This document shows, piece by piece, positions 5,877 through 27,401 of a stretch of DNA of 64,000 nucleotides (position 1 is the first letter of the stretch; each line of letters starts with the position of its first letter). A program made the translations under genes and the position numbers. The DNA lies in IMG/VR virus record IMGVR_UViG_3300012988_000001, positions 186,001 to 250,000 of that record; one strand, given 5' to 3'. Under the pieces are notes generated by a model, which was not told the DNA's origin, searched no databases, and saw nothing but the letters and a program-made list of their open reading frames with translations.

Positions 5877-7622
5877 ATGAGTTGGACTAAATTTATGACA
5901 ACAGCGAGGTCGAAAGTATCGACCTCCAAAATAGAGCAAAGCAAAAGTCCTTCAAAGACAACTGGCTCTAAGTCGAATTACGCGTCATATTTGCCAGTAG
6001 TATATACTGGCTTATCTAACCGTACTGATCGATACAGACAATATGAACAAATGGACCAAGATCCTGAAATTAGAACTGCTCTTGATATTATCGCAGATTT
6101 TTGTACTCAAAGCGTTGAGGATTATGGTCTACCATTTAAAATTCGCTACAAAGATAATAGCATTGGTGATTCGGAAGTAACAACTTTAGAAGACCGTCTA
6201 GAATCATGGGCTGAACAAAATGATTTCAAAACTCGAATTTATGAAATTGTACGTGGACTTCTTAAGTACGGCGATCAATTCTTTATTCGTGACCCAGAAA
6301 CAATGGAATGGATTTGGGTATCACCTGCAAACGTAGAAGGTGTATTCGTCAACGAAGAAACTGGTAAAAATCCAGTTGCTTACTTTATTCGTGACGTTTC
6401 TTATAATATGCAGGATAAAATTTTCACAAACCTTCAAATAGGATATGACAAAATGGCATATCCGGGTACTATGCCAAACGCATTAGCAGGTTCTGCTAGT
6501 CAATTTGGTGGTATCGGTGGTGGTTATGCTAATGCTAGTAATGCTAACAGTGCAGACCCATTTAGTATGGCTGCTGGACGTAAAGATGTTATTCCAGTTG
6601 CAGCAGAACACGTTGTTCACTTAACTTTAAATACCGGACAAGACCCAGTATGGCCTTTCGGTACTAGTATTCTTGAATATATCTTTAAAGTATATAAACA
6701 AAAAGAATTACTAGAAGACAGTATCATCATTTATCGTGTACAACGTGCTCCAGAGCGTCGTGTATTCAAAATTGATGTTGGTGAAATGCAAACTCACCAA
6801 GCAATGGCATATGTTGAACGTTTCAAAAACGAAATCCACCAGCGTCGTATACCTTCTAATAAAGGTGGCAGTACTTCACTAATGGATGCAGCATATAACC
6901 CACTTAGTATTTTAGAAGACTATTTCTTCCCTCAAAGTTCTGAAGGTCGTGGTAGTTCTGTAGAAACATTACCGGGTGGTGATAACTTAGGTCAGATTGA
7001 CGACTTGCGTTATTTTAACAACAAATTAATTCGTGGTCTACAAATTCCAGCATCTTATCTTCCACAAGGTCCAGATGATGGTGGTGTAGCGTTATTTGGT
7101 GATGGTGCGACACAAGCTATGGCTAGTGAATTGCGTTTCAATAACCAATGTCAACGTTATCAACGTTTAATTGCGAAAGTATTTGATATGGAATTTAAAC
7201 GCTTCATGGTTAAAAGCGGTTATAGTATTAGTGCTTCATCCTTTGAAGTAATCTTCAATCCACCAATTAACTTTGCTTCTTATCGTAAAGCAGAATTGGA
7301 TGCGAAACTTATTAATACTTACATGCCACTTGATAGCTTAAGTTATATGTCTAAACAAACCATCCTTAAGAAAATGGGATTCGAACAAAGCGATATCGTA
7401 GAGAACGAACAAAATTGGCTCAAGGAAAATCCAGATGCAATGGAAAAACAAGCTGCTTCTGATGAAGCTGGATTACAATCTGTCGGTATTGATGCACCTA
7501 ACGATCCGGGTATGGATTTAGGCATGGATGAAGACGGTAATATGGAAAGTGCTGATAAAGAGTTCCAAGATATGGTTGGAAACAATGATTTTAACCCGAA
7601 TAATTTAGGTTCTTCTTTCTAA
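5877..7622 (+). CDS. portal protein (T4 gp20-like)
   Basis: LEDSIIIYRVQRAPERRVFKIDVG, EDYFFP, GSSVETLPGG, IDDLRYF motifs. Confidence 0.96.
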   Translation: MSWTKFMTTARSKVSTSKIEQSKSPSKTTGSKSNYASYLPVVYTGLSNRTDRYRQYEQMDQDPEIRTALDIIADFCTQSVEDYGLPFKIRYKDNSIGDSEVTTLEDRLESWAEQNDFKTRIYEIVRGLLKYGDQFFIRDPETMEWIWVSPANVEGVFVNEETGKNPVAYFIRDVSYNMQDKIFTNLQIGYDKMAYPGTMPNALAGSASQFGGIGGGYANASNANSADPFSMAAGRKDVIPVAAEHVVHLTLNTGQDPVWPFGTSILEYIFKVYKQKELLEDSIIIYRVQRAPERRVFKIDVGEMQTHQAMAYVERFKNEIHQRRIPSNKGGSTSLMDAAYNPLSILEDYFFPQSSEGRGSSVETLPGGDNLGQIDDLRYFNNKLIRGLQIPASYLPQGPDDGGVALFGDGATQAMASELRFNNQCQRYQRLIAKVFDMEFKRFMVKSGYSISASSFEVIFNPPINFASYRKAELDAKLINTYMPLDSLSYMSKQTILKKMGFEQSDIVENEQNWLKENPDAMEKQAASDEAGLQSVGIDAPNDPGMDLGMDEDGNMESADKEFQDMVGNNDFNPNNLGSSF

Positions 7623-12064: not shown

Positions 12065-12072
12065 GCTATAAT
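12044..12072 (+). promoter_or_regulatory. sigma70-type promoter
   Basis: TTGACG-17nt-TATAAT with extended -10 TG. Confidence 0.75.
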
Positions 12073-12099
12073 TTTATTATTATTGACGAGGAAACCAAA

Positions 12100-13011
12100 A
12101 TGAATGCCAATGAACACAATTTTATTAATCGCGTCAACGCAAAGTATGGTGAAGGTAAGTACTCATTTGACAAAATGACATACATCAACGCACACACCAA
12201 AGTAGAACTGTTTTGTGCGAATGGAAACCATTACTTCACAATCGCTCCGATGCATATGGTATCAAAAAGTTCCAAAGGCTGCAATATTTGTCAGAAAAAC
12301 ACACCATACAGTACTGAAGAATTTGTAGCAAAAATATCAAAAATGCATCCGACGCTAACCTTTGAAAAAACCGTTTACAAAAAACAGAGGGAAGGAAATG
12401 TGATTGTAACGTGCCATGCAGATCCTGATAATGTTCACGATTGGGAAGTTGCCGCCCAAACACTACTTAAGGGTAACATATCATGTGGAATATGCACAGG
12501 CCGCAAACGCCGCACAAAAAATCAATTCATTTCTGAAGCCAAAAAGATTCATGGTAATAAGTATGATTACTCTAAAGTTGACTATGCAAATAGTGAAACC
12601 TATGTGACTATTACTTGCCCCGATGATGGTGATTTTCGCCAGCAACCAAAGGCACATATTTCAGGTCGTGGTTGTCCAAAATGTGGTAAGTATGGCTATC
12701 AGCCAAGTAAACCGGGATATTTCTACGTACAGAAATTGGTATCTGCTGATAAAGTACTGTACAAGTACGGAATTACTGGTGATATGGATCGTAGGATTAC
12801 AGAACAATCACGAAATTCGGTTTTCAAACACACTATTTTAGTAGAAAGGTACTTTGAAGATGGTAAAAAGCCTTTAGTACTTGAAAAGTTCCTAAAAACA
12901 TACATTGAAAGTGGCATTGCTACACCAGATGAGTTACAATCTGGATTTACAGAGACATTTGACGAGAAATACTTGTCATTAGTTTTAGAAATCGTAAATA
13001 ATTTCAAATAG
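12100..13011 (+). mobile_element. free-standing homing endonuclease (Zn-ribbon repeats plus GIY-YIG-like domain)
   Basis: Three repeats of type YDYSKVDY...ITCP...H..G.GCPKC; C-terminal FYV...YKYGIT..MDRR. Confidence 0.8.
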
Positions 13012-13036
13012 CCCCTATAAAGAGGATAAAAAGAAT

Positions 13037-13441
13037 ATGAGAGTCAAGGATGACATGATAGTAACGGTATACAAGTTTCCTAATCAGGGATTTTACCCTA
13101 ATATAGAGGGTGGATTTGACATGTATATTGATATGTACACAGAAGTTGCGTTTTGTGAGGCATTACAGCAGTTATATGTTAGTATAGAAGCTGTGAAGTA
13201 CTTAAAAGCTCAATATGTAGCTGACATTCTCAAAGTTGAGAGTGAAGAAATGCTTTACAAGGACTACGTTCAGATGTATAAAGATAAGTTGAACGCAAAA
13301 TACCCGGATGCACCAGTACTGGCGACCATTGAGTTGGATGCATCTGGAAGACCCAAGCCCCCAACACCAGATTATTTGAAACCACAGGATGGTTTTCAAA
13401 AATTGCGTGATGCAGGGTTAAATTTCAGTATTTCGAGATGA
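13037..13441 (+). CDS. hypothetical protein
   Basis: 134 aa ORF with GAGG SD. Confidence 0.6.
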   Translation: MRVKDDMIVTVYKFPNQGFYPNIEGGFDMYIDMYTEVAFCEALQQLYVSIEAVKYLKAQYVADILKVESEEMLYKDYVQMYKDKLNAKYPDAPVLATIELDASGRPKPPTPDYLKPQDGFQKLRDAGLNFSISR

Positions 13442-13447
13442 TAAATA
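13440..13447 (+). promoter_or_regulatory. T4-like late promoter with RBS-occluding hairpin
   Basis: GATAAATA followed by CCTCC-N7-GGAGG. Confidence 0.65.
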
Positions 13448-13469
13448 CCTCCAATGATAGGAGGAATAT

Positions 13470-13778
13470 ATGTCTCAAATTTGTTATGTAATTACGAATC
13501 CAGCATGGCCTGAATGGGTAAAGATTGGATTCACATCTAAGTCGGAAATGAAAACACGCTTAAGTACTTACCAGACCGGAACACCATTCCGTGATTTTGA
13601 AGTATACCATGAAGTACACTTTGATGATGCGAAAGAAGCTGAAAAAGAAGTACATAAGAGATTGAAGCAAATGAATGCTTCAAGGAGTCCCGGTACTGAA
13701 TGGTTTAAGATGCCTAAGAAATTAGCTGCTAACATGATTGATGGAGTAGCAGACGACTTGGATAATGGACTTCTATAA
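13470..13778 (+). CDS. T5orf172 / GIY-YIG family protein
   Basis: CYVITNPAWPEWVKIGFT..RLSTYQTGTP..AEKEVH. Confidence 0.85.
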   Translation: MSQICYVITNPAWPEWVKIGFTSKSEMKTRLSTYQTGTPFRDFEVYHEVHFDDAKEAEKEVHKRLKQMNASRSPGTEWFKMPKKLAANMIDGVADDLDNGLL

Positions 13779-15961: not shown

Positions 15962-15998
15962 AAGCACGATGAGCAATGACGCTCTCGTGCTTTTTTTA
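15962..15998 (+). terminator. intrinsic terminator overlapping promoter start site
   Basis: AAGCACGA(T)GAGC-N6-GCTCTCGTGCTT then T-run. Confidence 0.75.
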
Positions 15999-16014
15999 TA
16001 TATGGAGAAACACA

Positions 16015-16314
16015 ATGGCTAAGAAAACTGAAAACAAAGTACAAATTCAAGACCTAAACGACGAACAACGTAAACGTCTTGGCTCTGCACTAAACAACGC
16101 AGTCGTCCAGCTAACCTATATGGAAGATACCAAAGCTGCATACGGTGATTTCATCAATTCCGTGGCTGATGAACTAGGTATTGACGCTAGTACCATCAAA
16201 CAAGCTGCAACTCGTATGCACAAAGGTGATTTCTTCGATAAAGTCCGTAAACAAGACGAAATCGAAACCATCCTTTCAATTACTGGTAACCTACCAGAAG
16301 ATAACGACGAATAA
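16015..16314 (+). CDS. dsDNA-binding protein (T4 DsbA-like)
   Basis: GGAG SD; ELGIDASTIKQAATRMHK resembles DsbA ELGVDGKMFNRLLALYHK. Confidence 0.6.
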   Translation: MAKKTENKVQIQDLNDEQRKRLGSALNNAVVQLTYMEDTKAAYGDFINSVADELGIDASTIKQAATRMHKGDFFDKVRKQDEIETILSITGNLPEDNDE

Positions 16315-16322
16315 TCGTCTAC

Positions 16323-16346
16323 AGCCTCCTAGATTGGGGGCTTTTT
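16323..16346 (+). terminator. intrinsic terminator
   Basis: AGCCTCC-N6-GGGGGCT-TTTT. Confidence 0.7.
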
Positions 16347-16377: not shown

Positions 16378-19300
16378 ATGTATATAGATGGATTTATGGA
16401 ACGTAAACGAACTGGTGATATTCTCCACGTAGCAGAACGTATCAACGGTCGTCGTGTCCTACGACAGCTTGACCCTGTATATGAATACTATGTCGAATCA
16501 CCAACCGGAACTTTCAAAACTATTCACGGTACTATGGCAGAACAGAAAACGTTCTCTAATAGTAGAGATTTGAAAAATTCCGTCGAGTTAGATGCAGGTA
16601 GAAGAATTTACGAATCAGATTGTAACGTAACATTCAAAACACTAGCTCGTGAATATATGGGTAAAGGATCACCAGATCTAAATATGGCATTTTTCGATAT
16701 TGAAACCGACTTTCACAAGAAGCTCGGATATGCCCCACCAAGTAACCCATTCAACCGTGTAACTGCAATTTCCATTTATCAAAGTTGGACAGATAAAGAT
16801 TACGTTCTTACTCTTGCTCCAGAAGATATGGATACAGTTGAAGCACAAGATATTATCAACCGTCTTAATGCGGAAACTAACAACCCAAACAGTACTGTAA
16901 TACTTTATACCGAAGAAACAGAAATGTTTAATGACTTCTTCGATCTAATCGATGATGCCGATGTACTTTCTGGTTGGAATAGTGAGTTTTATGATATTCC
17001 ATATATGATAAACCGTACTGCTAAAATCTTCAACGCTGCTACAACCGCTCGTTGGTGTTTGTGGAATAAGAAACCTGTAGCTCGTGAAGCTGATATGTTT
17101 GGTAAGACGATTACTACTTATGACCTAATTGGTCGTGTTCACCTAGATTATCTAGCATTGTATAAGAAACACGCAGGACAAGTAGAACAATCATATAAAC
17201 TAGACTTTATCGGTGAGAAAGTAACTGGTGAAAACAAAGTTGCTTATGAAGGTTCTCTTGACAAATTGTATCGTGAAGATTATGCTACGTTTCTACGTTA
17301 TTCTAAGCAGGATAGCATTCTACTTAAAAAGATTAACGATAAACTAGACTACATCAATCTACACAATCGACTAGCACACAAAGAATGTGTACTAATCAGT
17401 ACTACAATGGGTTCGGTAGCACTAATCGACACCGCAATAATCAACTTGGCACACAGCCGTGGTGAAGTAGTGTTCGATAAGAAACCACAAGAAGATGGGT
17501 TTGAGAGTGATGATCGTTATGATTATCTAATGGAAGACGAAGACGATGGCTCGGACAATGAACCAGTATCAGCTAAAGCAGCAGGTGCATGGGTACAAGA
17601 TCCAGTACTAGGACTAGTAGATTTCCTAGGATGTACTGACTTTAACTCACTATATCCAACGGTACTACGTGCACTTGGTATGAGTACTGAATGTATTCTA
17701 GGTCAAATCCGTCAAGATTATACTGATGCTCACCTTGCAGCACGTGTAGAAGAACAGCGTATTAAATCTAAATCGAAGAAATTCGAGCCAGATTGGACGG
17801 CTGCTTGGCACGGTCTATTTGCGAGTGTAGAATTCACTATGGTTCGTGAAAAATCCCAGAAGATTCTAAACGTAGATTTGGAAGACGGTTCAAGTTTCCA
17901 AGTAACTGGTGAAGAACTTTACAATATCATTTATGCACCTGATAGTACAATTGTACTTTCTGCAAATGGTACAATGTTCGATAAAACCAAATACGGTGTT
18001 ATCCCTGAGATTCTAACGCAGTGGTACTCTGAACGTAAATCACAGCAGAAGATGGTTATTGACTTTAAACACATCTATACTGATGGTTGGGAAATGCCAG
18101 AAGATGCAATTGCACGTATAGAGGCTGCTATGGCCCTCCACAGCCGTTCTGAGCGTATGTATCGCACAAACCTACACGAAGACGATCCAGTTTATTTGAT
18201 TCGTCAGGCGTTGGTACAGGCTGATTATGAGGGTGTTGGGAAGCTAATCACCGAGAATGGTCTATTGTTAGAAGATGGTCGTATCAAATGTACTAAAGAA
18301 GAGAAGTCTTATTGTAAGACACAATCTGCATTCTGGAAACAGAACCAACAGATTCGTAAAATTCTTCTAAACTCATTGTATGGTGCACTACTAAACAAAG
18401 GTTCTCGTTTCTTCGATAAACGTCTAGGTCAATCTGTTACACTAACTGGTCGTTCAATGACTAAACACATGGCATCCCGTATCAACGAGATCTGCACTGG
18501 TGTTTACGATCATGGCGGTGGTGTAGTAATCTATGGTGATACTGACTCCGTGTATTTCAGCGTAGCTCACTACATGAAAGAACAAGGTCTACCATTTGAT
18601 CTTACAAAAGAAGAAGTTGTCGATTTGTATGTTAAAATCGGTGACGAAATGGGTGCAACCTTCCCTGAATTTATGGATGAGACATTCAACACTGGTATTG
18701 AGAATGGTAAAATTGTAGGTGCTGACTTAGAAATGGTAGGCTCTCGTGGTCTATTCTTGAAGAAGAAGCGTTACGCTATTCTAAAGTACTGGGAAGATGG
18801 ATTCCGTAAAGATGAAGGTGATTCACCGGGTGAAATCAAAGCGATGGGCTTGGAAATTAAACGTTCCGATACGCCAAAATACATCCAAGATTTCTTACAA
18901 GAAACTCTTATCGCATTACTAGTTGGCGAACAAGAGGAACAACTACGCAATCGCGTTCGTGCGTTCAAAACTATTTTCAAAGACAAACCAGTACAACAGA
19001 AAGGTCAACCACGTACAGTGAAGAACTATTCGAACCTAGAAGAAGAGTACAAGAAAGTCGGTAAGATTTCTGTATCTCACGTTCTAGCAGCAATTCAATG
19101 GAACAAACTACGTGATATCTATGAAGATCAATCTGTACCAGAAGCAACTGACGGTACTAAAGTTATCGTTTGTAAGTTGAAGCCAAATCCAATGGGAATA
19201 AAAGCTGTCGGCTACCCAATTGATTGTGCTGAGTACTTACCAGAGTGGTTCTTGGATTTACCATTTGATGAAGATGAAATGGAAAAATCGGTCTTGACCA

Positions 19301-19395
19301 AAAAACTAGGTAACATTTTCGGTATCCTAAACATGGATATCGCAATAAACGAGAAGAGTACTATGGAAATGAACACAGGCTTCTTCTCATGGTAA
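16378..19395 (+). CDS. family B DNA polymerase (T4 gp43-like)
   Basis: Exo FDIET and GWNSEFYDIPY; Pol DFNSLYP, KILLNSLYG, YGDTDS. Confidence 0.98.
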   Translation: MYIDGFMERKRTGDILHVAERINGRRVLRQLDPVYEYYVESPTGTFKTIHGTMAEQKTFSNSRDLKNSVELDAGRRIYESDCNVTFKTLAREYMGKGSPDLNMAFFDIETDFHKKLGYAPPSNPFNRVTAISIYQSWTDKDYVLTLAPEDMDTVEAQDIINRLNAETNNPNSTVILYTEETEMFNDFFDLIDDADVLSGWNSEFYDIPYMINRTAKIFNAATTARWCLWNKKPVAREADMFGKTITTYDLIGRVHLDYLALYKKHAGQVEQSYKLDFIGEKVTGENKVAYEGSLDKLYREDYATFLRYSKQDSILLKKINDKLDYINLHNRLAHKECVLISTTMGSVALIDTAIINLAHSRGEVVFDKKPQEDGFESDDRYDYLMEDEDDGSDNEPVSAKAAGAWVQDPVLGLVDFLGCTDFNSLYPTVLRALGMSTECILGQIRQDYTDAHLAARVEEQRIKSKSKKFEPDWTAAWHGLFASVEFTMVREKSQKILNVDLEDGSSFQVTGEELYNIIYAPDSTIVLSANGTMFDKTKYGVIPEILTQWYSERKSQQKMVIDFKHIYTDGWEMPEDAIARIEAAMALHSRSERMYRTNLHEDDPVYLIRQALVQADYEGVGKLITENGLLLEDGRIKCTKEEKSYCKTQSAFWKQNQQIRKILLNSLYGALLNKGSRFFDKRLGQSVTLTGRSMTKHMASRINEICTGVYDHGGGVVIYGDTDSVYFSVAHYMKEQGLPFDLTKEEVVDLYVKIGDEMGATFPEFMDETFNTGIENGKIVGADLEMVGSRGLFLKKKRYAILKYWEDGFRKDEGDSPGEIKAMGLEIKRSDTPKYIQDFLQETLIALLVGEQEEQLRNRVRAFKTIFKDKPVQQKGQPRTVKNYSNLEEEYKKVGKISVSHVLAAIQWNKLRDIYEDQSVPEATDGTKVIVCKLKPNPMGIKAVGYPIDCAEYLPEWFLDLPFDEDEMEKSVLTKKLGNIFGILNMDIAINEKSTMEMNTGFFSW

Positions 19396-19406
19396 TAGGA
19401 ATATAA

Positions 19407-19985
19407 ATGACAATTTATCAACGCATTGGGGAGGCTATTGCCTCCCAAGGAAAAGTAACATTAGTAGCAGCATTAACTCCAGCAGAGGAACATATTCTAA
19501 CTACTAGTGGCTTCAAGAAAGTCGGTACTATGGATCTTAATGGTACTAACATCGATCTATTTGAAGTTAAAGTAACGCAAGTAGTCAACGCACCAGTACC
19601 ACCATATAACGGAATCCGTACTCCATCTCCGGGTGTACAACCGTATAAGACTAATGATACATATCCACGCAAGTATGAAGCACAATGGCCTGAGAACTAT
19701 CGTCTATATACTTACGGTACTGGTACTCCACCAGATGTTCAATATCGTGGTAGTACTACATCTCTTGTAGATGCAGCTTACAATCCACTTAGTATTCTAA
19801 GTGATTATACCTTACCGGAAAATAAAACATTACTAAAAATTGATATTGGTTCTTTGTCAACTGATGAAGTCCAAAAGGTATGTGATGATATCAAACGTGA
19901 TTACACGCCACGTGTGTACACAAACGATAGCTGGACCTCTTATAATCAAGGCTATACTGGAAACCGTGATTTCCGTAGCTGGTAA
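19407..19985 (+). CDS. hypothetical protein with portal-derived segments
   Basis: AGGA SD; contains TSLVDAAYNPLSILSDY and KIDIG segments matching the portal. Confidence 0.75.
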   Translation: MTIYQRIGEAIASQGKVTLVAALTPAEEHILTTSGFKKVGTMDLNGTNIDLFEVKVTQVVNAPVPPYNGIRTPSPGVQPYKTNDTYPRKYEAQWPENYRLYTYGTGTPPDVQYRGSTTSLVDAAYNPLSILSDYTLPENKTLLKIDIGSLSTDEVQKVCDDIKRDYTPRVYTNDSWTSYNQGYTGNRDFRSW

Positions 19986-20001: not shown

Positions 20002-20032
20002 TTGGGACGTATGACTGATTATGTGATATAAT
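20002..20032 (+). promoter_or_regulatory. phage TTGGGACA-class promoter
   Basis: TTGGGACG...TGTGATATAAT. Confidence 0.85.
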
Positions 20033-20088
20033 ACATACGTCACAACGATTAAACGTTAATAACAAAATGGAAATTTGGAGATTTAAAA

Positions 20089-20820
20089 ATGGATTTACGC
20101 AACGTACTACGCGACCTAGTTAACACCACCAACGGTATGGATTTCTCTTGCATTGCAGTTTCACGAGAAGACCGTGGCAATGGTAATCGTGTTTTTCTAG
20201 AAGCATACACTGATGATAAAACCCTAATCATGCGAGCAACTACCAAAGAAGACGTACCTGAAGTTGAAGGTCGTTTCGGTCTTGGTAACCTCGGAATGCT
20301 ACAAGGTCTTATGAATCTAAAAACCTACAACTCTGAATCTGCTAAGATCGCAGTCAACGCAGCAAACGGTGTTGTTAAAAGCCTAGCATTCTCTTCTGAT
20401 GACGCTAGCACGAACTTTATTGTTCAATCTGAGAAGTTTATTCCTGCTCAACCACGCTTTACTCCACAACCATATGATGTACAGGTTACACCTAGTGCTG
20501 CAAAGGTTGGCGAACTAAAGTCATTCTCTGGTGTATTCAAATCATTCTCTGCCTTAGTTACTCCTTATACTGAAGGTGATACACTATACTTCCACGTGGG
20601 AGAGAAGAATAAATCTAATCACAGCGGTGCACTAGCATTCACCAAAACTGATGGTGAACTAAAACTAGGATATGGTTACGCAATCGACCGTCTTCTACAA
20701 GCTCTAAACCGCGTATCTAATGCTGAGTCTATCACATTAGGTCTAACCAAAACAGGTATGTTGAACGTAACAGTCGATACTGGTATCACTGTGTTCGAAT
20801 TCTACATCCAAGGTTGCTAA
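20089..20820 (+). CDS. sliding clamp (T4 gp45-like)
   Basis: 243 aa alpha/beta protein near PolB; FGLGNLGMLQGLM resembles clamp FgIydL..fl. Confidence 0.7.
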   Translation: MDLRNVLRDLVNTTNGMDFSCIAVSREDRGNGNRVFLEAYTDDKTLIMRATTKEDVPEVEGRFGLGNLGMLQGLMNLKTYNSESAKIAVNAANGVVKSLAFSSDDASTNFIVQSEKFIPAQPRFTPQPYDVQVTPSAAKVGELKSFSGVFKSFSALVTPYTEGDTLYFHVGEKNKSNHSGALAFTKTDGELKLGYGYAIDRLLQALNRVSNAESITLGLTKTGMLNVTVDTGITVFEFYIQGC

Positions 20821-20827
20821 GTAATAC

Positions 20828-20854
20828 AGGGGAACATGATGTTCCCCTTATTTT
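20828..20854 (+). terminator. intrinsic terminator
   Basis: AGGGGAACA-tga-TGTTCCCCT-TATTTT. Confidence 0.75.

Positions 20855-25716: not shown

Positions 25717-27401
<1,685 letters not shown>

What the first reader, a model, noticed from the sequence alone, without database searches (positions are those of the whole stretch)
19407..19985. Protein carrying a permuted copy of the phage's own portal clip region
Seen: RGSTTSLVDAAYNPLSILSDYTLPE (from 19746) matches portal KGGSTSLMDAAYNPLSILEDYFFPQ (about 6861-6935) at 17/25 residues despite synonymous DNA divergence. It is followed by LLKIDIGSLSTDEVQKVCDDIKRDY, resembling portal VFKIDVGEMQTHQAMAYVERFKNEI, but the two blocks are in reversed order. 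The gene sits between PolB and the clamp, and ends F.SW like PolB. Known: this gp20 region forms the clip that contacts terminase and neck; Avs4 defence proteins sense portals. Inference: a soluble portal mimic acting as a decoy for portal-sensing immunity, a superinfection/packaging inhibitor, or a replication-packaging coupler.
Basis: partly seen in the sequence, partly recalled or inferred. Interest (0 to 1): 0.8.

Follow-up and report, generated by a model that had tools for sequence, protein, structure and literature searches.

The report
Free-standing, permuted copy of portal clip
A jumbo phage carries, next to its DNA polymerase gene, a small non-virion protein that holds a rearranged copy of the docking tip ("clip") of the phage's own portal protein; part of the copy is kept almost unchanged and part is swapped between near-identical strains, so it looks like a soluble portal mimic of a kind not described before, with its function still untested.

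Summary

**What the ORF is.** ORF 19407-19985 (192 aa) belongs to phrog_25089, a family seen only in RaK2/GAP32/121Q-like jumbo myoviruses.

**Match to the portal.**
- Residues 114-139 match portal residues 329-354 at 17/26 (E 7e-9).
- Nine of the 17 identical residues use different codons, so this is not recent gene conversion.

**Permutation.**
- In relatives the match covers the whole clip domain (T4 gp20 279-358) in reversed block order, joined end to start.
- A sister lineage (P0025) keeps the native order in the same gene slot. The circular permutation is therefore real, although the window's own second block has decayed.

**Architecture.** A conserved N-terminal domain (weakly like half a GNAT fold), a disordered linker, clip block A, clip block B, and a conserved tail.

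**Selection.**
- Block A is the best-conserved part of the family (dN/dS 0.06-0.37).
- Block B corresponds to helix alpha6, which terminase and neck proteins grip in T4. It is a hypervariable cassette holding 39% of all differences to the nearest strain in 1% of 17 kb. TerL is identical between those two strains.

**Context.** The gene lies in one terminator-bounded unit with PolB and a probable sliding clamp. Its orthologue was not found in the CBB virion proteome.

**Function.** Untested. I favour a counter-defence mimic (about 0.3) over an assembly regulator or a clamp-terminase coupler.

The parts
19407..19985 (+). Gene X: 192-aa modular protein of family phrog_25089. Shine-Dalgarno AGGA lies at 19397-19400, and the gene starts 11 nt after the PolB stop.
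   Evidence: (phrog_25089 E 6.3e-28)
19407..19577 (+). N-terminal domain (residues 1-57), order helix-strand-helix-strand-strand. It is the family-defining part and is present even in lineages that lost the clip pieces (121Q gp612, RaK2). It weakly resembles the CoA-binding half of a GNAT fold.
   Evidence: AF2 pLDDT 82-92. dN/dS 0.08-0.23. Foldseek GNAT hits at E 0.13-0.3. Atlas TM 0.65-0.70 to GNAT models. Invariant R6, G8, G35, F36, G40 in 38 sequences; Q5, I7, E9 and A10 are nearly invariant.
19578..19745 (+). Linker rich in Pro, Tyr, Gly and Thr (residues 58-113), predicted disordered.
   Evidence: pLDDT below 50. Variable length in alignment A1.
19746..19817 (+). Clip block A (residues 114-137). 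It copies portal residues 329-352 (T4 gp20 about 316-337) and is the most conserved segment of the family.
   Evidence: Mean column identity 0.88. dN/dS 0.06-0.37.
19827..19904 (+). Clip block B (residues 141-166). It is the counterpart of portal residues 295-320, meaning the first clip strand plus helix alpha6. Residues 146-169 correspond to the T4 gp20 288-311 peptide that binds gp17. In this copy the sequence has decayed.
   Evidence: Family-level homology. AF2 helix at 152-165. T4 mapping and PMC4493910.
19760..19925 (+). Hypervariable cassette covering the end of block A and all of block B. It is replaced between otherwise near-identical strains.
   Evidence: 75 of 194 differences to strain L021 over 17 kb lie here. 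Identity is 45-50% here against 93-100% in the flanks for L016, L017 and L019. A contig of run X17 replaces 19800-19913 with 150 other bases.
19905..19982 (+). Conserved C-terminal tail (residues 167-192) ending F-R-S-W.
   Evidence: dN/dS 0.1-0.26. Alignment A1. Terminal likeness to PolB.
5877..7622 (+). Portal protein (T4 gp20 family), the source of the copied segment. The clip is at about nt 6747-6977, with block B at 6756-6851 and block A at 6861-6968.
16378..19395 (+). Family B DNA polymerase, first gene of the transcription unit. Its C-terminus G-F-F-x-W is conserved in the relatives compared (G-F-L-E-W-I in fHe-Yen9-04).
20089..20820 (+). Probable sliding clamp (gp45/PCNA-like), last gene of the unit.
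   Evidence: lead only. No sequence-level hit.
16323..16342 (+). Terminator-like hairpin upstream of PolB.
   Evidence: A terminator is annotated at the same place in phage Munch.
20828..20848 (+). Terminator-like hairpin after the clamp gene. It closes the PolB-X-clamp unit.
25728..27398 (+). Large terminase, a candidate partner of a clip mimic. The T4-type late motif TATAAATA lies at 25717-25724.
   Evidence: The protein is 100% identical in the strain that carries a different cassette.

Best explanation
**What is shown.** Gene X encodes a non-virion, modular protein. Its C-terminal half is a captured copy of the phage's own portal clip domain, circularly permuted so that clip residues about 329-364 come first and about 293-325 follow. 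It hangs on a disordered linker from a small conserved N-terminal domain. X lies in one terminator-bounded unit with PolB and the probable clamp, so I infer it is transcribed with them. No T4-type late promoter motif precedes it, so I infer it is made before or independently of the late-expressed portal and terminase.

**Selection, also shown.** Block A is held almost identical to the portal. Block B exists as discrete, exchangeable types that differ strongly from each other but are conserved within a type. The terminase is identical between two strains with different types, and the portal clip is invariant across the whole clade.

**Mechanism, inferred.** X acts as a soluble molecular mimic of the clip of an unassembled portal subunit. 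The variable part does not track any invariant phage partner. The module is patchily kept or lost among relatives. I therefore think the most likely role is counter-defence: X binds host sensors that recognise portal or clip surfaces (Avs4/Avs11- or SpbK-like) without giving them the platform they need to oligomerise, or it covers the interface of new portal monomers. Block A would supply the conserved bait and block B the specificity.
For: - Homology and permutation. Pfam Portal_T4 hits 14 of 38 family members, and P0005 scores 26.3 bits against a cut-off of 22.9.
- Native-order relative P0025 in the same slot after PolB: colinear with portal 289-355, 49% identity, E 4e-18.
- Purifying selection on block A with synonymous divergence from the portal.
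- Cassette hot spot: 75 of 194 differences in 166 nt out of 17 kb. The same peak appears against three other strains.
- Block B dN/dS is 0.75-2 between types but 0.11 within a type (L017 against L019).
- TerL is 100% identical between strains with different cassettes. The portal clip is invariant across the clade.
- The clip module is lost or reduced in 121Q, RaK2, Yen9-04 and CBB while the N-domain stays.
- Operon structure and absence of a late motif. Not in the CBB virion MS list.
- Sensors of the portal clip or portal monomer exist (PMC12847820, PMC13581612).
- Other free-standing clip proteins occur in T4-like phages: P0063 in a cluster of small ORFs, and P0070.
Against: - No binding, expression or phenotype data exist. 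Reads laid on the region come from assembled contigs and cannot show transcription.
- A decoy should resemble the portal helix that sensors see, yet block B diverges from the invariant portal helix.
- Avs sensors use extended interfaces (stem, clip and wing for EcAvs4; PMC12847820, PMC13581612), which a roughly 60-residue piece covers poorly. SpbK is a Bacillus system.
- AF2 does not fold the clip part with confidence (pLDDT below 70).
- The conserved N-domain and the fixed place between PolB and the clamp across the clade suggest a replication-linked core function that this reading does not explain.
- The within-type dN/dS rests on one pair and 39 codons.
Confidence: 0.3

Rival explanations
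1. **Regulator of the phage's own head-packaging line.** X binds a phage partner of the clip: either portal protomers, through the strands that form the inter-subunit sheet, or terminase or neck proteins. It would delay or order assembly, for example by keeping portal monomers or terminase unengaged until proheads are ready.
For: - In T4 the clip holds the only main-chain inter-subunit sheet of the portal ring. A 24-residue clip peptide (288-311) binds gp17 and blocks packaging (PMC4493910). X contains the counterparts of all three strands and the helix.
- Block A, the conserved part, is identical to an invariant portal segment.
- If X is made from the replication unit it would be present before the late proteins.
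Against: - The portal clip and TerL are invariant, while block B, the helix that TerL and neck proteins grip, is hypervariable (PMC12929587).
- The clip module has been lost in several lineages whose portals are unchanged, so it cannot be a core assembly step.
Confidence: 0.22
2. **Replication-packaging (or replication-late function) coupler.** The C-terminal tail docks on the sliding clamp as the polymerase tail does in T4-type replisomes. The tethered clip piece would recruit terminase to replicated DNA.
For: - X lies in the PolB-X-clamp unit.
- PolB and X are the only ORFs of the window that end in W, both as F-x-S-W with N at position -7.
- The tail is under purifying selection.
- From my own knowledge of T4: gp43, gp33 and gp55 bind gp45 through C-terminal tails, and gp17 has been linked to gp55 and the clamp.
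Against: - The clamp (72-100% identical among relatives) and the PolB tail are conserved, but the X tail is not. It ends R-N-[VI] in the GAP32-like clade, is absent in CBB and Hallingskeid, and in Munch shares only the terminal W with PolB.
- The clamp identity itself is only a lead.
- The terminase-contact helix is the least conserved part of X.
Confidence: 0.15
3. **The clip pieces are a decaying relic.** A captured gene fragment would have no function of its own, the N-terminal domain would carry the function, and the similarity would be historical.
For: - Repeated partial or complete loss of the pieces.
- The window's own block B and the end of block A have decayed.
- AF2 predicts no compact fold.
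Against: - Block A is the most conserved segment of the family (0.88 column identity, above the N-domain) with dN/dS 0.06-0.37, while synonymous sites have diverged from the portal.
- Block B is conserved within a cassette type (dN/dS 0.11).
Confidence: 0.1

Closest known systems
Clip domain of the T4-family portal protein (gp20; Pfam PF07230)
   Same: Clear sequence homology to the whole clip: three strands plus helix alpha6, T4 residues about 283-349. Identity to the phage's own portal reaches about 80% in block A of relatives.
   Different: X holds only about 60 of about 580 residues. It has no stem, wing or crown, so it cannot form a portal. The block order is circularly permuted. The piece is fused to an unrelated N-domain, is not in the virion, and its helix part is hypervariable.
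Synthetic T4 gp20 peptide 288-311, which binds gp17 and inhibits DNA packaging (cited in PMC4493910)
   Same: X residues 146-169 are the positional counterpart of that peptide, so a free clip piece that binds terminase has experimental precedent.
   Different: That is a laboratory peptide, not a gene product. In X this stretch is the least portal-like part, and the counterparts of T4 R295/K296 are D153/E154.
Phage counter-defence mimics and decoys (for example the DNA mimic Ocr; the SPbeta counter-defence against SpbK cited in PMC12847820)
   Same: A protein that may imitate a molecule seen by host immunity. It also shows the patchy distribution and rapid, mosaic evolution typical of such genes.
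   Different: No known example imitates a piece of the phage's own virion protein, and no inhibition has been shown for X. The comparison rests on my own knowledge plus the cited paper.
C-terminal clamp-binding tails of T4 gp43, gp33 and gp55 (own knowledge)
   Same: A short conserved aromatic tail at the extreme C-terminus, shared in form with the neighbouring polymerase.
   Different: The likeness holds only in this clade of the family. No binding has been tested.
GNAT acetyltransferase fold
   Same: The N-domain has the helix-strand-helix-strand-strand order of the CoA-binding half. It has a Q-x-x-G-x-A motif with G invariant and Q and A nearly invariant, and an invariant G-F.
   Different: It is only about 55 residues and the N-terminal arm of the fold is missing. 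There is no Pfam GNAT hit in 38 members, and the structural scores are below significance.

Membership tests
phrog_25089 (unknown function) | Significant match to the family profile | tested here: met
   E 6.3e-28, residues 2-146
T4-type portal protein (Pfam PF07230 Portal_T4) | Score above Pfam's gathering threshold | tested here: inconclusive
   The window protein has no Pfam hit at E up to 1. Fourteen of 38 relatives hit, and P0005 scores 26.3 bits against a cut-off of 22.9.
T4-type portal protein (Pfam PF07230 Portal_T4) | Coverage of the 433-position profile (wing, stem, clip, crown) | tested here: not met
   Only profile positions about 202-270 are matched, in two short stretches. The protein is 192 aa.
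T4-type portal protein (Pfam PF07230 Portal_T4) | Colinear order of clip elements | tested here: not met
   The order is reversed in the window clade. The native order is kept in relative P0025.
T4-type portal protein (Pfam PF07230 Portal_T4) | Virion component | tested here: not met
   Orthologue CBB_264 is absent from the CBB virion ESI-MS/MS list, in which its neighbours CBB_260, 270 and 271 appear. This is indirect evidence from one relative.
Clamp-binding proteins with a C-terminal tail (T4 gp43/gp33/gp55 type) | Extreme C-terminal motif shared with the cognate polymerase | tested here: inconclusive
   The window pair shares N-x-x-F-x-S-W. This is not conserved in the Munch, GAP32, CBB or Hallingskeid orthologues.
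Clamp-binding proteins with a C-terminal tail (T4 gp43/gp33/gp55 type) | Physical binding to the clamp | not testable with these tools
   No multimer prediction or assay was available.
Phage counter-defence decoys | Binds and neutralises a host immune sensor | not testable with these tools
   Only circumstantial signs: patchy distribution, hypervariable cassette and probable early transcription unit.
GNAT acetyltransferases | Complete fold with N-terminal arm, and a Pfam/sequence match | tested here: not met
   No Pfam GNAT family in 38 members. Only the C-terminal half is matched, at Foldseek E 0.13-0.3.
Diversity-generating retroelement targets | Variation confined to substitutions at template adenines, with a nearby template repeat and reverse transcriptase | tested here: not met
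   The cassette differs by indels and about 50% of bases. The family profile finds no second copy in the window other than the portal.

The most novel reading that the evidence does not exclude
X would be the first phage-encoded mimic of the phage's own portal. It would be a bait made from the clip domain that disarms bacterial sensors of portal proteins, with exchangeable helix cassettes acting as specificity alleles in an arms race. Circular permutation of a captured structural-protein domain would be the evolutionary route.
Probability: 0.3. Interest if true: 0.85.

Novelty: categorically new. Interest (0 to 1): 0.66.

Why it matters
- **Portal clip as a hub.** The clip is the docking site for terminase and neck proteins and is now known to be seen by bacterial immune sensors. 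A separately encoded, selected, rearranged copy of it means the phage uses that surface for something other than building the virion.
- **If it is a decoy or shield.** It would be a new class of counter-defence (self-mimicry of a structural protein). It would help explain how large T4-related phages tolerate pattern-recognition immunity aimed at parts they cannot change.
- **If it regulates assembly or links packaging to replication.** It would be a new control point in jumbo-phage morphogenesis.
- **Evolution.** The family is a clean natural case of domain capture followed by circular permutation, with both orders still extant in the same gene slot.
- **Annotation.** The gene is annotated as hypothetical in every deposited genome I looked at. 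The 243-aa neighbour is probably the clamp that earlier work reported as missing from these phages.

Tried and rejected
- **Co-variation** between the clip copy and the cognate portal cannot be tested, because the portal clip is practically invariant across the clade.
- **Recent gene conversion** from the portal is rejected: 9 of 17 identical residues use different codons.
- **Colinear homology** to portal 273-325 instead of a permutation is rejected. The profile alignment there rests on a weak L-L-E-D likeness. Block A matches 329-364 far better and in relatives is joined directly to the start of block B.
- **Structure.** Two AF2 runs (window protein with 19 sequences, P0005 with 38) folded only the N-domain, so a fold comparison of the clip part with solved portals was pointless. 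Foldseek found only family members in the viral library and sub-threshold GNAT hits in the PDB.
- **Expression.** The public runs that hold this phage are available only as assembled contigs, some from "RNA" libraries that are probably DNA, so they give no evidence of transcription.
- **Clamp identity by sequence.** Pfam, NCBIfam, and PDB searches with a single sequence and with a 9-sequence profile all found nothing.
- **Tail against the portal N-terminus.** A likeness between X residues 166-181 and portal 38-58 has E 0.2-5 and is kept only as a note.
- **Wider distribution of N-domain-less clip proteins.** The P0063 type has only two clusters. Most other short "clip" hits are fragments of portal genes.
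- **Gao et al. 2022** (PMC10028730) could not be read. The EcAvs4 interface is quoted second-hand from PMC12847820.

Full report
**1. What is in the sequence**

ORF 19407-19985 (+) encodes 192 aa. It starts 11 nt after the stop of a 1005-aa family B DNA polymerase (16378-19395) and has an AGGA ribosome-binding site. The portal is ORF 5877-7622 (Pfam Portal_T4, E 1.7e-117).

BLASTP aligns residues 114-139 of the small protein with portal residues 329-354. Identity is 17/26 with no gaps and E 7e-9. Against every ORF of 50 aa or more in the window, the portal is the only significant hit (E 3.6e-7). The DNA of the two stretches is 53/78 identical, and 9 of the 17 identical residues use different codons. 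The likeness is therefore kept at protein level and is not a recent copy.

**2. Which phage and which family**

- The portal is 90% identical to those of Salmonella phages Munch, 7t3 and SE_PL and Klebsiella phage fENko-Kae01. It is 71-78% identical to those of 121Q, PBECO4, GAP32, CBB, BF and fHe-Yen9-04. This places the window in the RaK2-like jumbo myoviruses.
- The small protein belongs to phrog_25089, a family of unknown function (E 6.3e-28).
- tblastn finds it in 24 phage records, all of this clade and all annotated as hypothetical.
- The gene order PolB, X, 243-aa ORF, phosphoesterase, zinc ribbon, GroES is kept in every relative examined, except that 121Q lacks the phosphoesterase and Hallingskeid has no annotated zinc-ribbon gene.

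**3. The permutation is real**

In the window's own protein the second block (residues 141-166) shares only 6/25 residues with portal 296-320 and gives no BLAST hit. The relatives settle the question:

- In P0005, P0007, P0011 and P0012 the match to the portal runs from block A through the G-R-G-x-S-V-E-T strand and then straight into R-T-F-K-I-D-V-G and the following helix. The end of the clip is joined to its beginning.
- Block B gives separate HSPs. P0012 141-170 matches portal 293-322 at 50% identity (E 4.7e-7). P0015 gives E 5.7e-4 and P0018 gives E 2e-3.
- A profile of 19 family members hits the window portal twice in reversed order, with E 1e-13 and 1.6e-7.
- Pfam's Portal_T4 model hits 14 of 38 members, and P0005 scores above the curated cut-off.
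- P0025 sits in the same slot after PolB in a 121Q-like lineage. It has the N-domain followed by the clip in native order, colinear with portal 289-355 at 49% identity (E 4e-18).

Both orders therefore exist in one gene family. That pattern is what duplication followed by differential loss, the usual route to circular permutation, would leave (inference).

**4. Mapping on the solved T4 portal**

The window portal aligns with T4 gp20 (3JA7, 6UZC). Window E303, M304, H307 and Q308 fall on T4 N291, M292, R295 and K296, and window T364 falls on T4 T349.

- The T4 clip is residues 279-358, made of three strands and helix alpha6. It contains the only main-chain inter-subunit sheet of the portal ring (PMC4493910).
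- Its tip and helix alpha6 contact gp17. The peptide 288-311 binds gp17 and inhibits packaging (PMC4493910).
- The neck proteins gp13 and gp14 insert between alpha6 helices and contact R295, K296, H300, H303, K309, R311, N323 and R339 (PMC12929587).

Block B of X is thus the counterpart of the partner-gripping helix. Block A is the counterpart of T4 residues about 316-337, which lead into the inner clip loop. My statement that block A is mostly an internal or inter-subunit element is an inference from those papers. I had no coordinates to check it.

**5. Architecture**

AF2 folds residues 1-57 with confidence (pLDDT 82-92) as helix-strand-helix-strand-strand. The rest scores below 70, apart from a helix at 152-165.

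- **N-domain.** It defines the family and persists where the clip is gone, as in 121Q gp612 (98 aa) and the RaK2 90-aa protein. Its fold has no significant PDB match. The best hits are GNAT acetyltransferases at E 0.13-0.3, and the Atlas also returns GNAT models at TM 0.65-0.70 over 57 residues. The motif Q5-x-x-G8-x-A10 (G invariant, Q and A nearly invariant) and the invariant G35-F36 fit GNAT motifs A and B. No member hits a Pfam GNAT family. This remains a lead only.
- **Linker.** Residues 58-113 are rich in Pro, Tyr and Gly and vary in length.
- **Tail.** The last 26 residues are conserved in the window and Munch clades.

**6. Selection and the cassette**

| Region | Mean column identity | Pairwise dN/dS |
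|---|---|---|
| N-domain | 0.80 | 0.08-0.23 |
| Linker | 0.60 | about 0.2-0.4 |
| Block A | 0.88 | 0.06-0.37 |
| Block B | 0.53 | 0.75-2 between cassette types; 0.11 for L017 against L019, which share a type |
| Tail | 0.65 | 0.1-0.26 |

- Against the nearest strain (L021, 98.9% identical over 17 kb), 75 of 194 differences fall in 19760-19925.
- The same 150-nt peak of divergence, 45-50% identity with indels, appears against L016, L017 and L019, whose flanks are 93-100% identical.
- A contig of run X17 carries a replacement of 19800-19913.
- Synonymous distances also jump between modules. Window against L017 gives dS 0.94 in the N-domain and 0.08 in the linker. Window against L019 gives the reverse. 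The gene is therefore a recombination mosaic.
- TerL is 100% identical between the window and L021, and the portal clip is invariant across the clade. The cassette does not follow either obvious phage partner.

**7. Context and expression**

- Terminator-like hairpins at 16323-16342 and 20828-20848 bracket PolB, X and the 243-aa ORF. Munch is annotated in the same way.
- The T4-type late motif TATAAATA lies directly before TerL (25717) and before head genes (7972, 9559), but not before PolB or X. The CBB paper describes the same two promoter classes.
- The 243-aa ORF is probably the sliding clamp. Its Atlas neighbours carry gp45-slide_C or PCNA families with 194-198 shared features, and the nearest model has TM 0.75 to PCNA. 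No sequence method confirms this. The CBB paper reported gp45 as missing.
- CBB_264 is not among the virion proteins found by MS.
- Transcription could not be shown.

**8. The tail**

PolB ends G-F-F-[SEDT]-W in five of the six relatives compared (G-F-L-E-W-I in fHe-Yen9-04). In the window, X ends N-R-D-F-R-S-W and PolB ends N-T-G-F-F-S-W. They are the only two of 83 listed ORFs that end in W.

Across the family the X tail does not hold this form. It ends [FYHN]-R-[NS]-W in two clades and R-N-[VI] in the GAP32-like clade, and is absent in CBB and Hallingskeid. The clamp is 72-100% conserved. The tail is selected, but its equation with the polymerase's clamp-binding tail is weak.

**9. Interpretation**

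Shown: X is a selected, soluble, permuted clip copy with a conserved half and a cassette-like half.

Inferred: it acts by mimicry. I weigh the options as follows.

| Reading | Confidence | Main reason for | Main reason against |
|---|---|---|---|
| Counter-defence mimic | about 0.3 | Best fits the patchy retention, mosaicism, discrete cassette types, independence from TerL and portal, and the existence of sensors aimed at the clip helix (SpbK) or the unassembled portal (EcAvs4) (PMC12847820, PMC13581612) | The divergence of block B from the portal helix and the extended interfaces of Avs sensors |
| Assembly regulator | about 0.22 | Fits the T4 peptide precedent and the strand content of X | Does not fit the losses or the variable helix |
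| Clamp coupler | about 0.15 | Fits the operon position and the local tail likeness | Does not fit the family-wide tails |
| Relic | about 0.1 | Repeated loss of the pieces | Contradicted by selection on block A |

**10. Other free-standing clip proteins**

The profile search of 1.8 billion representatives found mostly portals and portal fragments. It also found two complete small genes without the N-domain:

- P0063 (90 aa) is colinear with portal 280-354 (E 6e-16) and lies in a run of small ORFs.
- P0070 (193 aa) has at least two copies of block B followed by the end of block A, and lies in a T4-like structural region.

The P0063 type is rare, with two clusters. Capture of the clip as a separate protein has therefore happened more than once.

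**11. Novelty**

Full-text searches for portal clip decoys or mimics returned nothing, and every deposited orthologue I saw is annotated as hypothetical. I rate the feature as not matching any described kind of system. Its function is still open.

Noticed in passing
window 20089-20820: The 243-aa ORF after X is probably the phage's sliding clamp (gp45/PCNA-like by Atlas features and the neighbour's structure). It is annotated as hypothetical in all relatives, and the CBB paper lists gp45 as absent from these phages.
   Followed up: partly
window 20002-20041: The X-clamp spacer has an 8-bp inverted repeat (20006-20013 and 20034-20041). It encloses an extended -10-like element, TGA-TATAAT at 20024-20032, with TTGGGA 19 nt upstream. 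This may be a regulated internal promoter or operator for the clamp gene.
   Followed up: no
P0045, P0054 (portal fragments): Some T4-like portals carry an intein-like insertion directly after the F-F-P-Q-[TS] end of clip block A. The most conserved clip motif is therefore also an intein home.
   Followed up: no
L022 16406-19063 (strain of P0004): The large terminase of a close relative is 885 aa with a weak LAGLIDADG hit, against 542-556 aa here. It probably holds an intein or homing endonuclease insertion.
   Followed up: no
window 25717-25770: The TerL ORF as listed starts at TTG 25728, overlapping the late-promoter-like TATAAATA (25717-25724). The gene called in strain L021 is 14 codons shorter (542 aa) and 100% identical, so the true start is probably the downstream one.
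   Followed up: partly
window 19902-19949 against portal 5988-6050: The start of the X tail (Y-T-P-R-V-Y-T-N-D-S-W-T-S-Y-N-Q) weakly resembles portal residues 38-58 (E 0.2-5). This could be a third portal-derived piece or chance.
   Followed up: partly
window 12100-13778: An HNH endonuclease gene (12100-13011) and a T5orf172/GIY-YIG-like ORF (13470-13778) sit between the major head protein and tail fibre genes. This stretch is replaced or divergent in strains L021 and L022: the blastn alignments stop at about 12070-12100 and resume at 12942.
   Followed up: no
L013 8001-8582 (P0070); L014 492-764 (P0063): Two complete small genes in other T4-like phages encode clip-derived proteins without the N-domain. 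One of them has tandem copies of the strand-helix block.
   Followed up: partly
window 15976-16314: The 112-aa ORF just upstream of PolB matches phrog_639 (transcriptional regulator, E 8e-8) and weakly matches Jag/EloR RNA-binding models. It ends at the terminator that precedes PolB.
   Followed up: no
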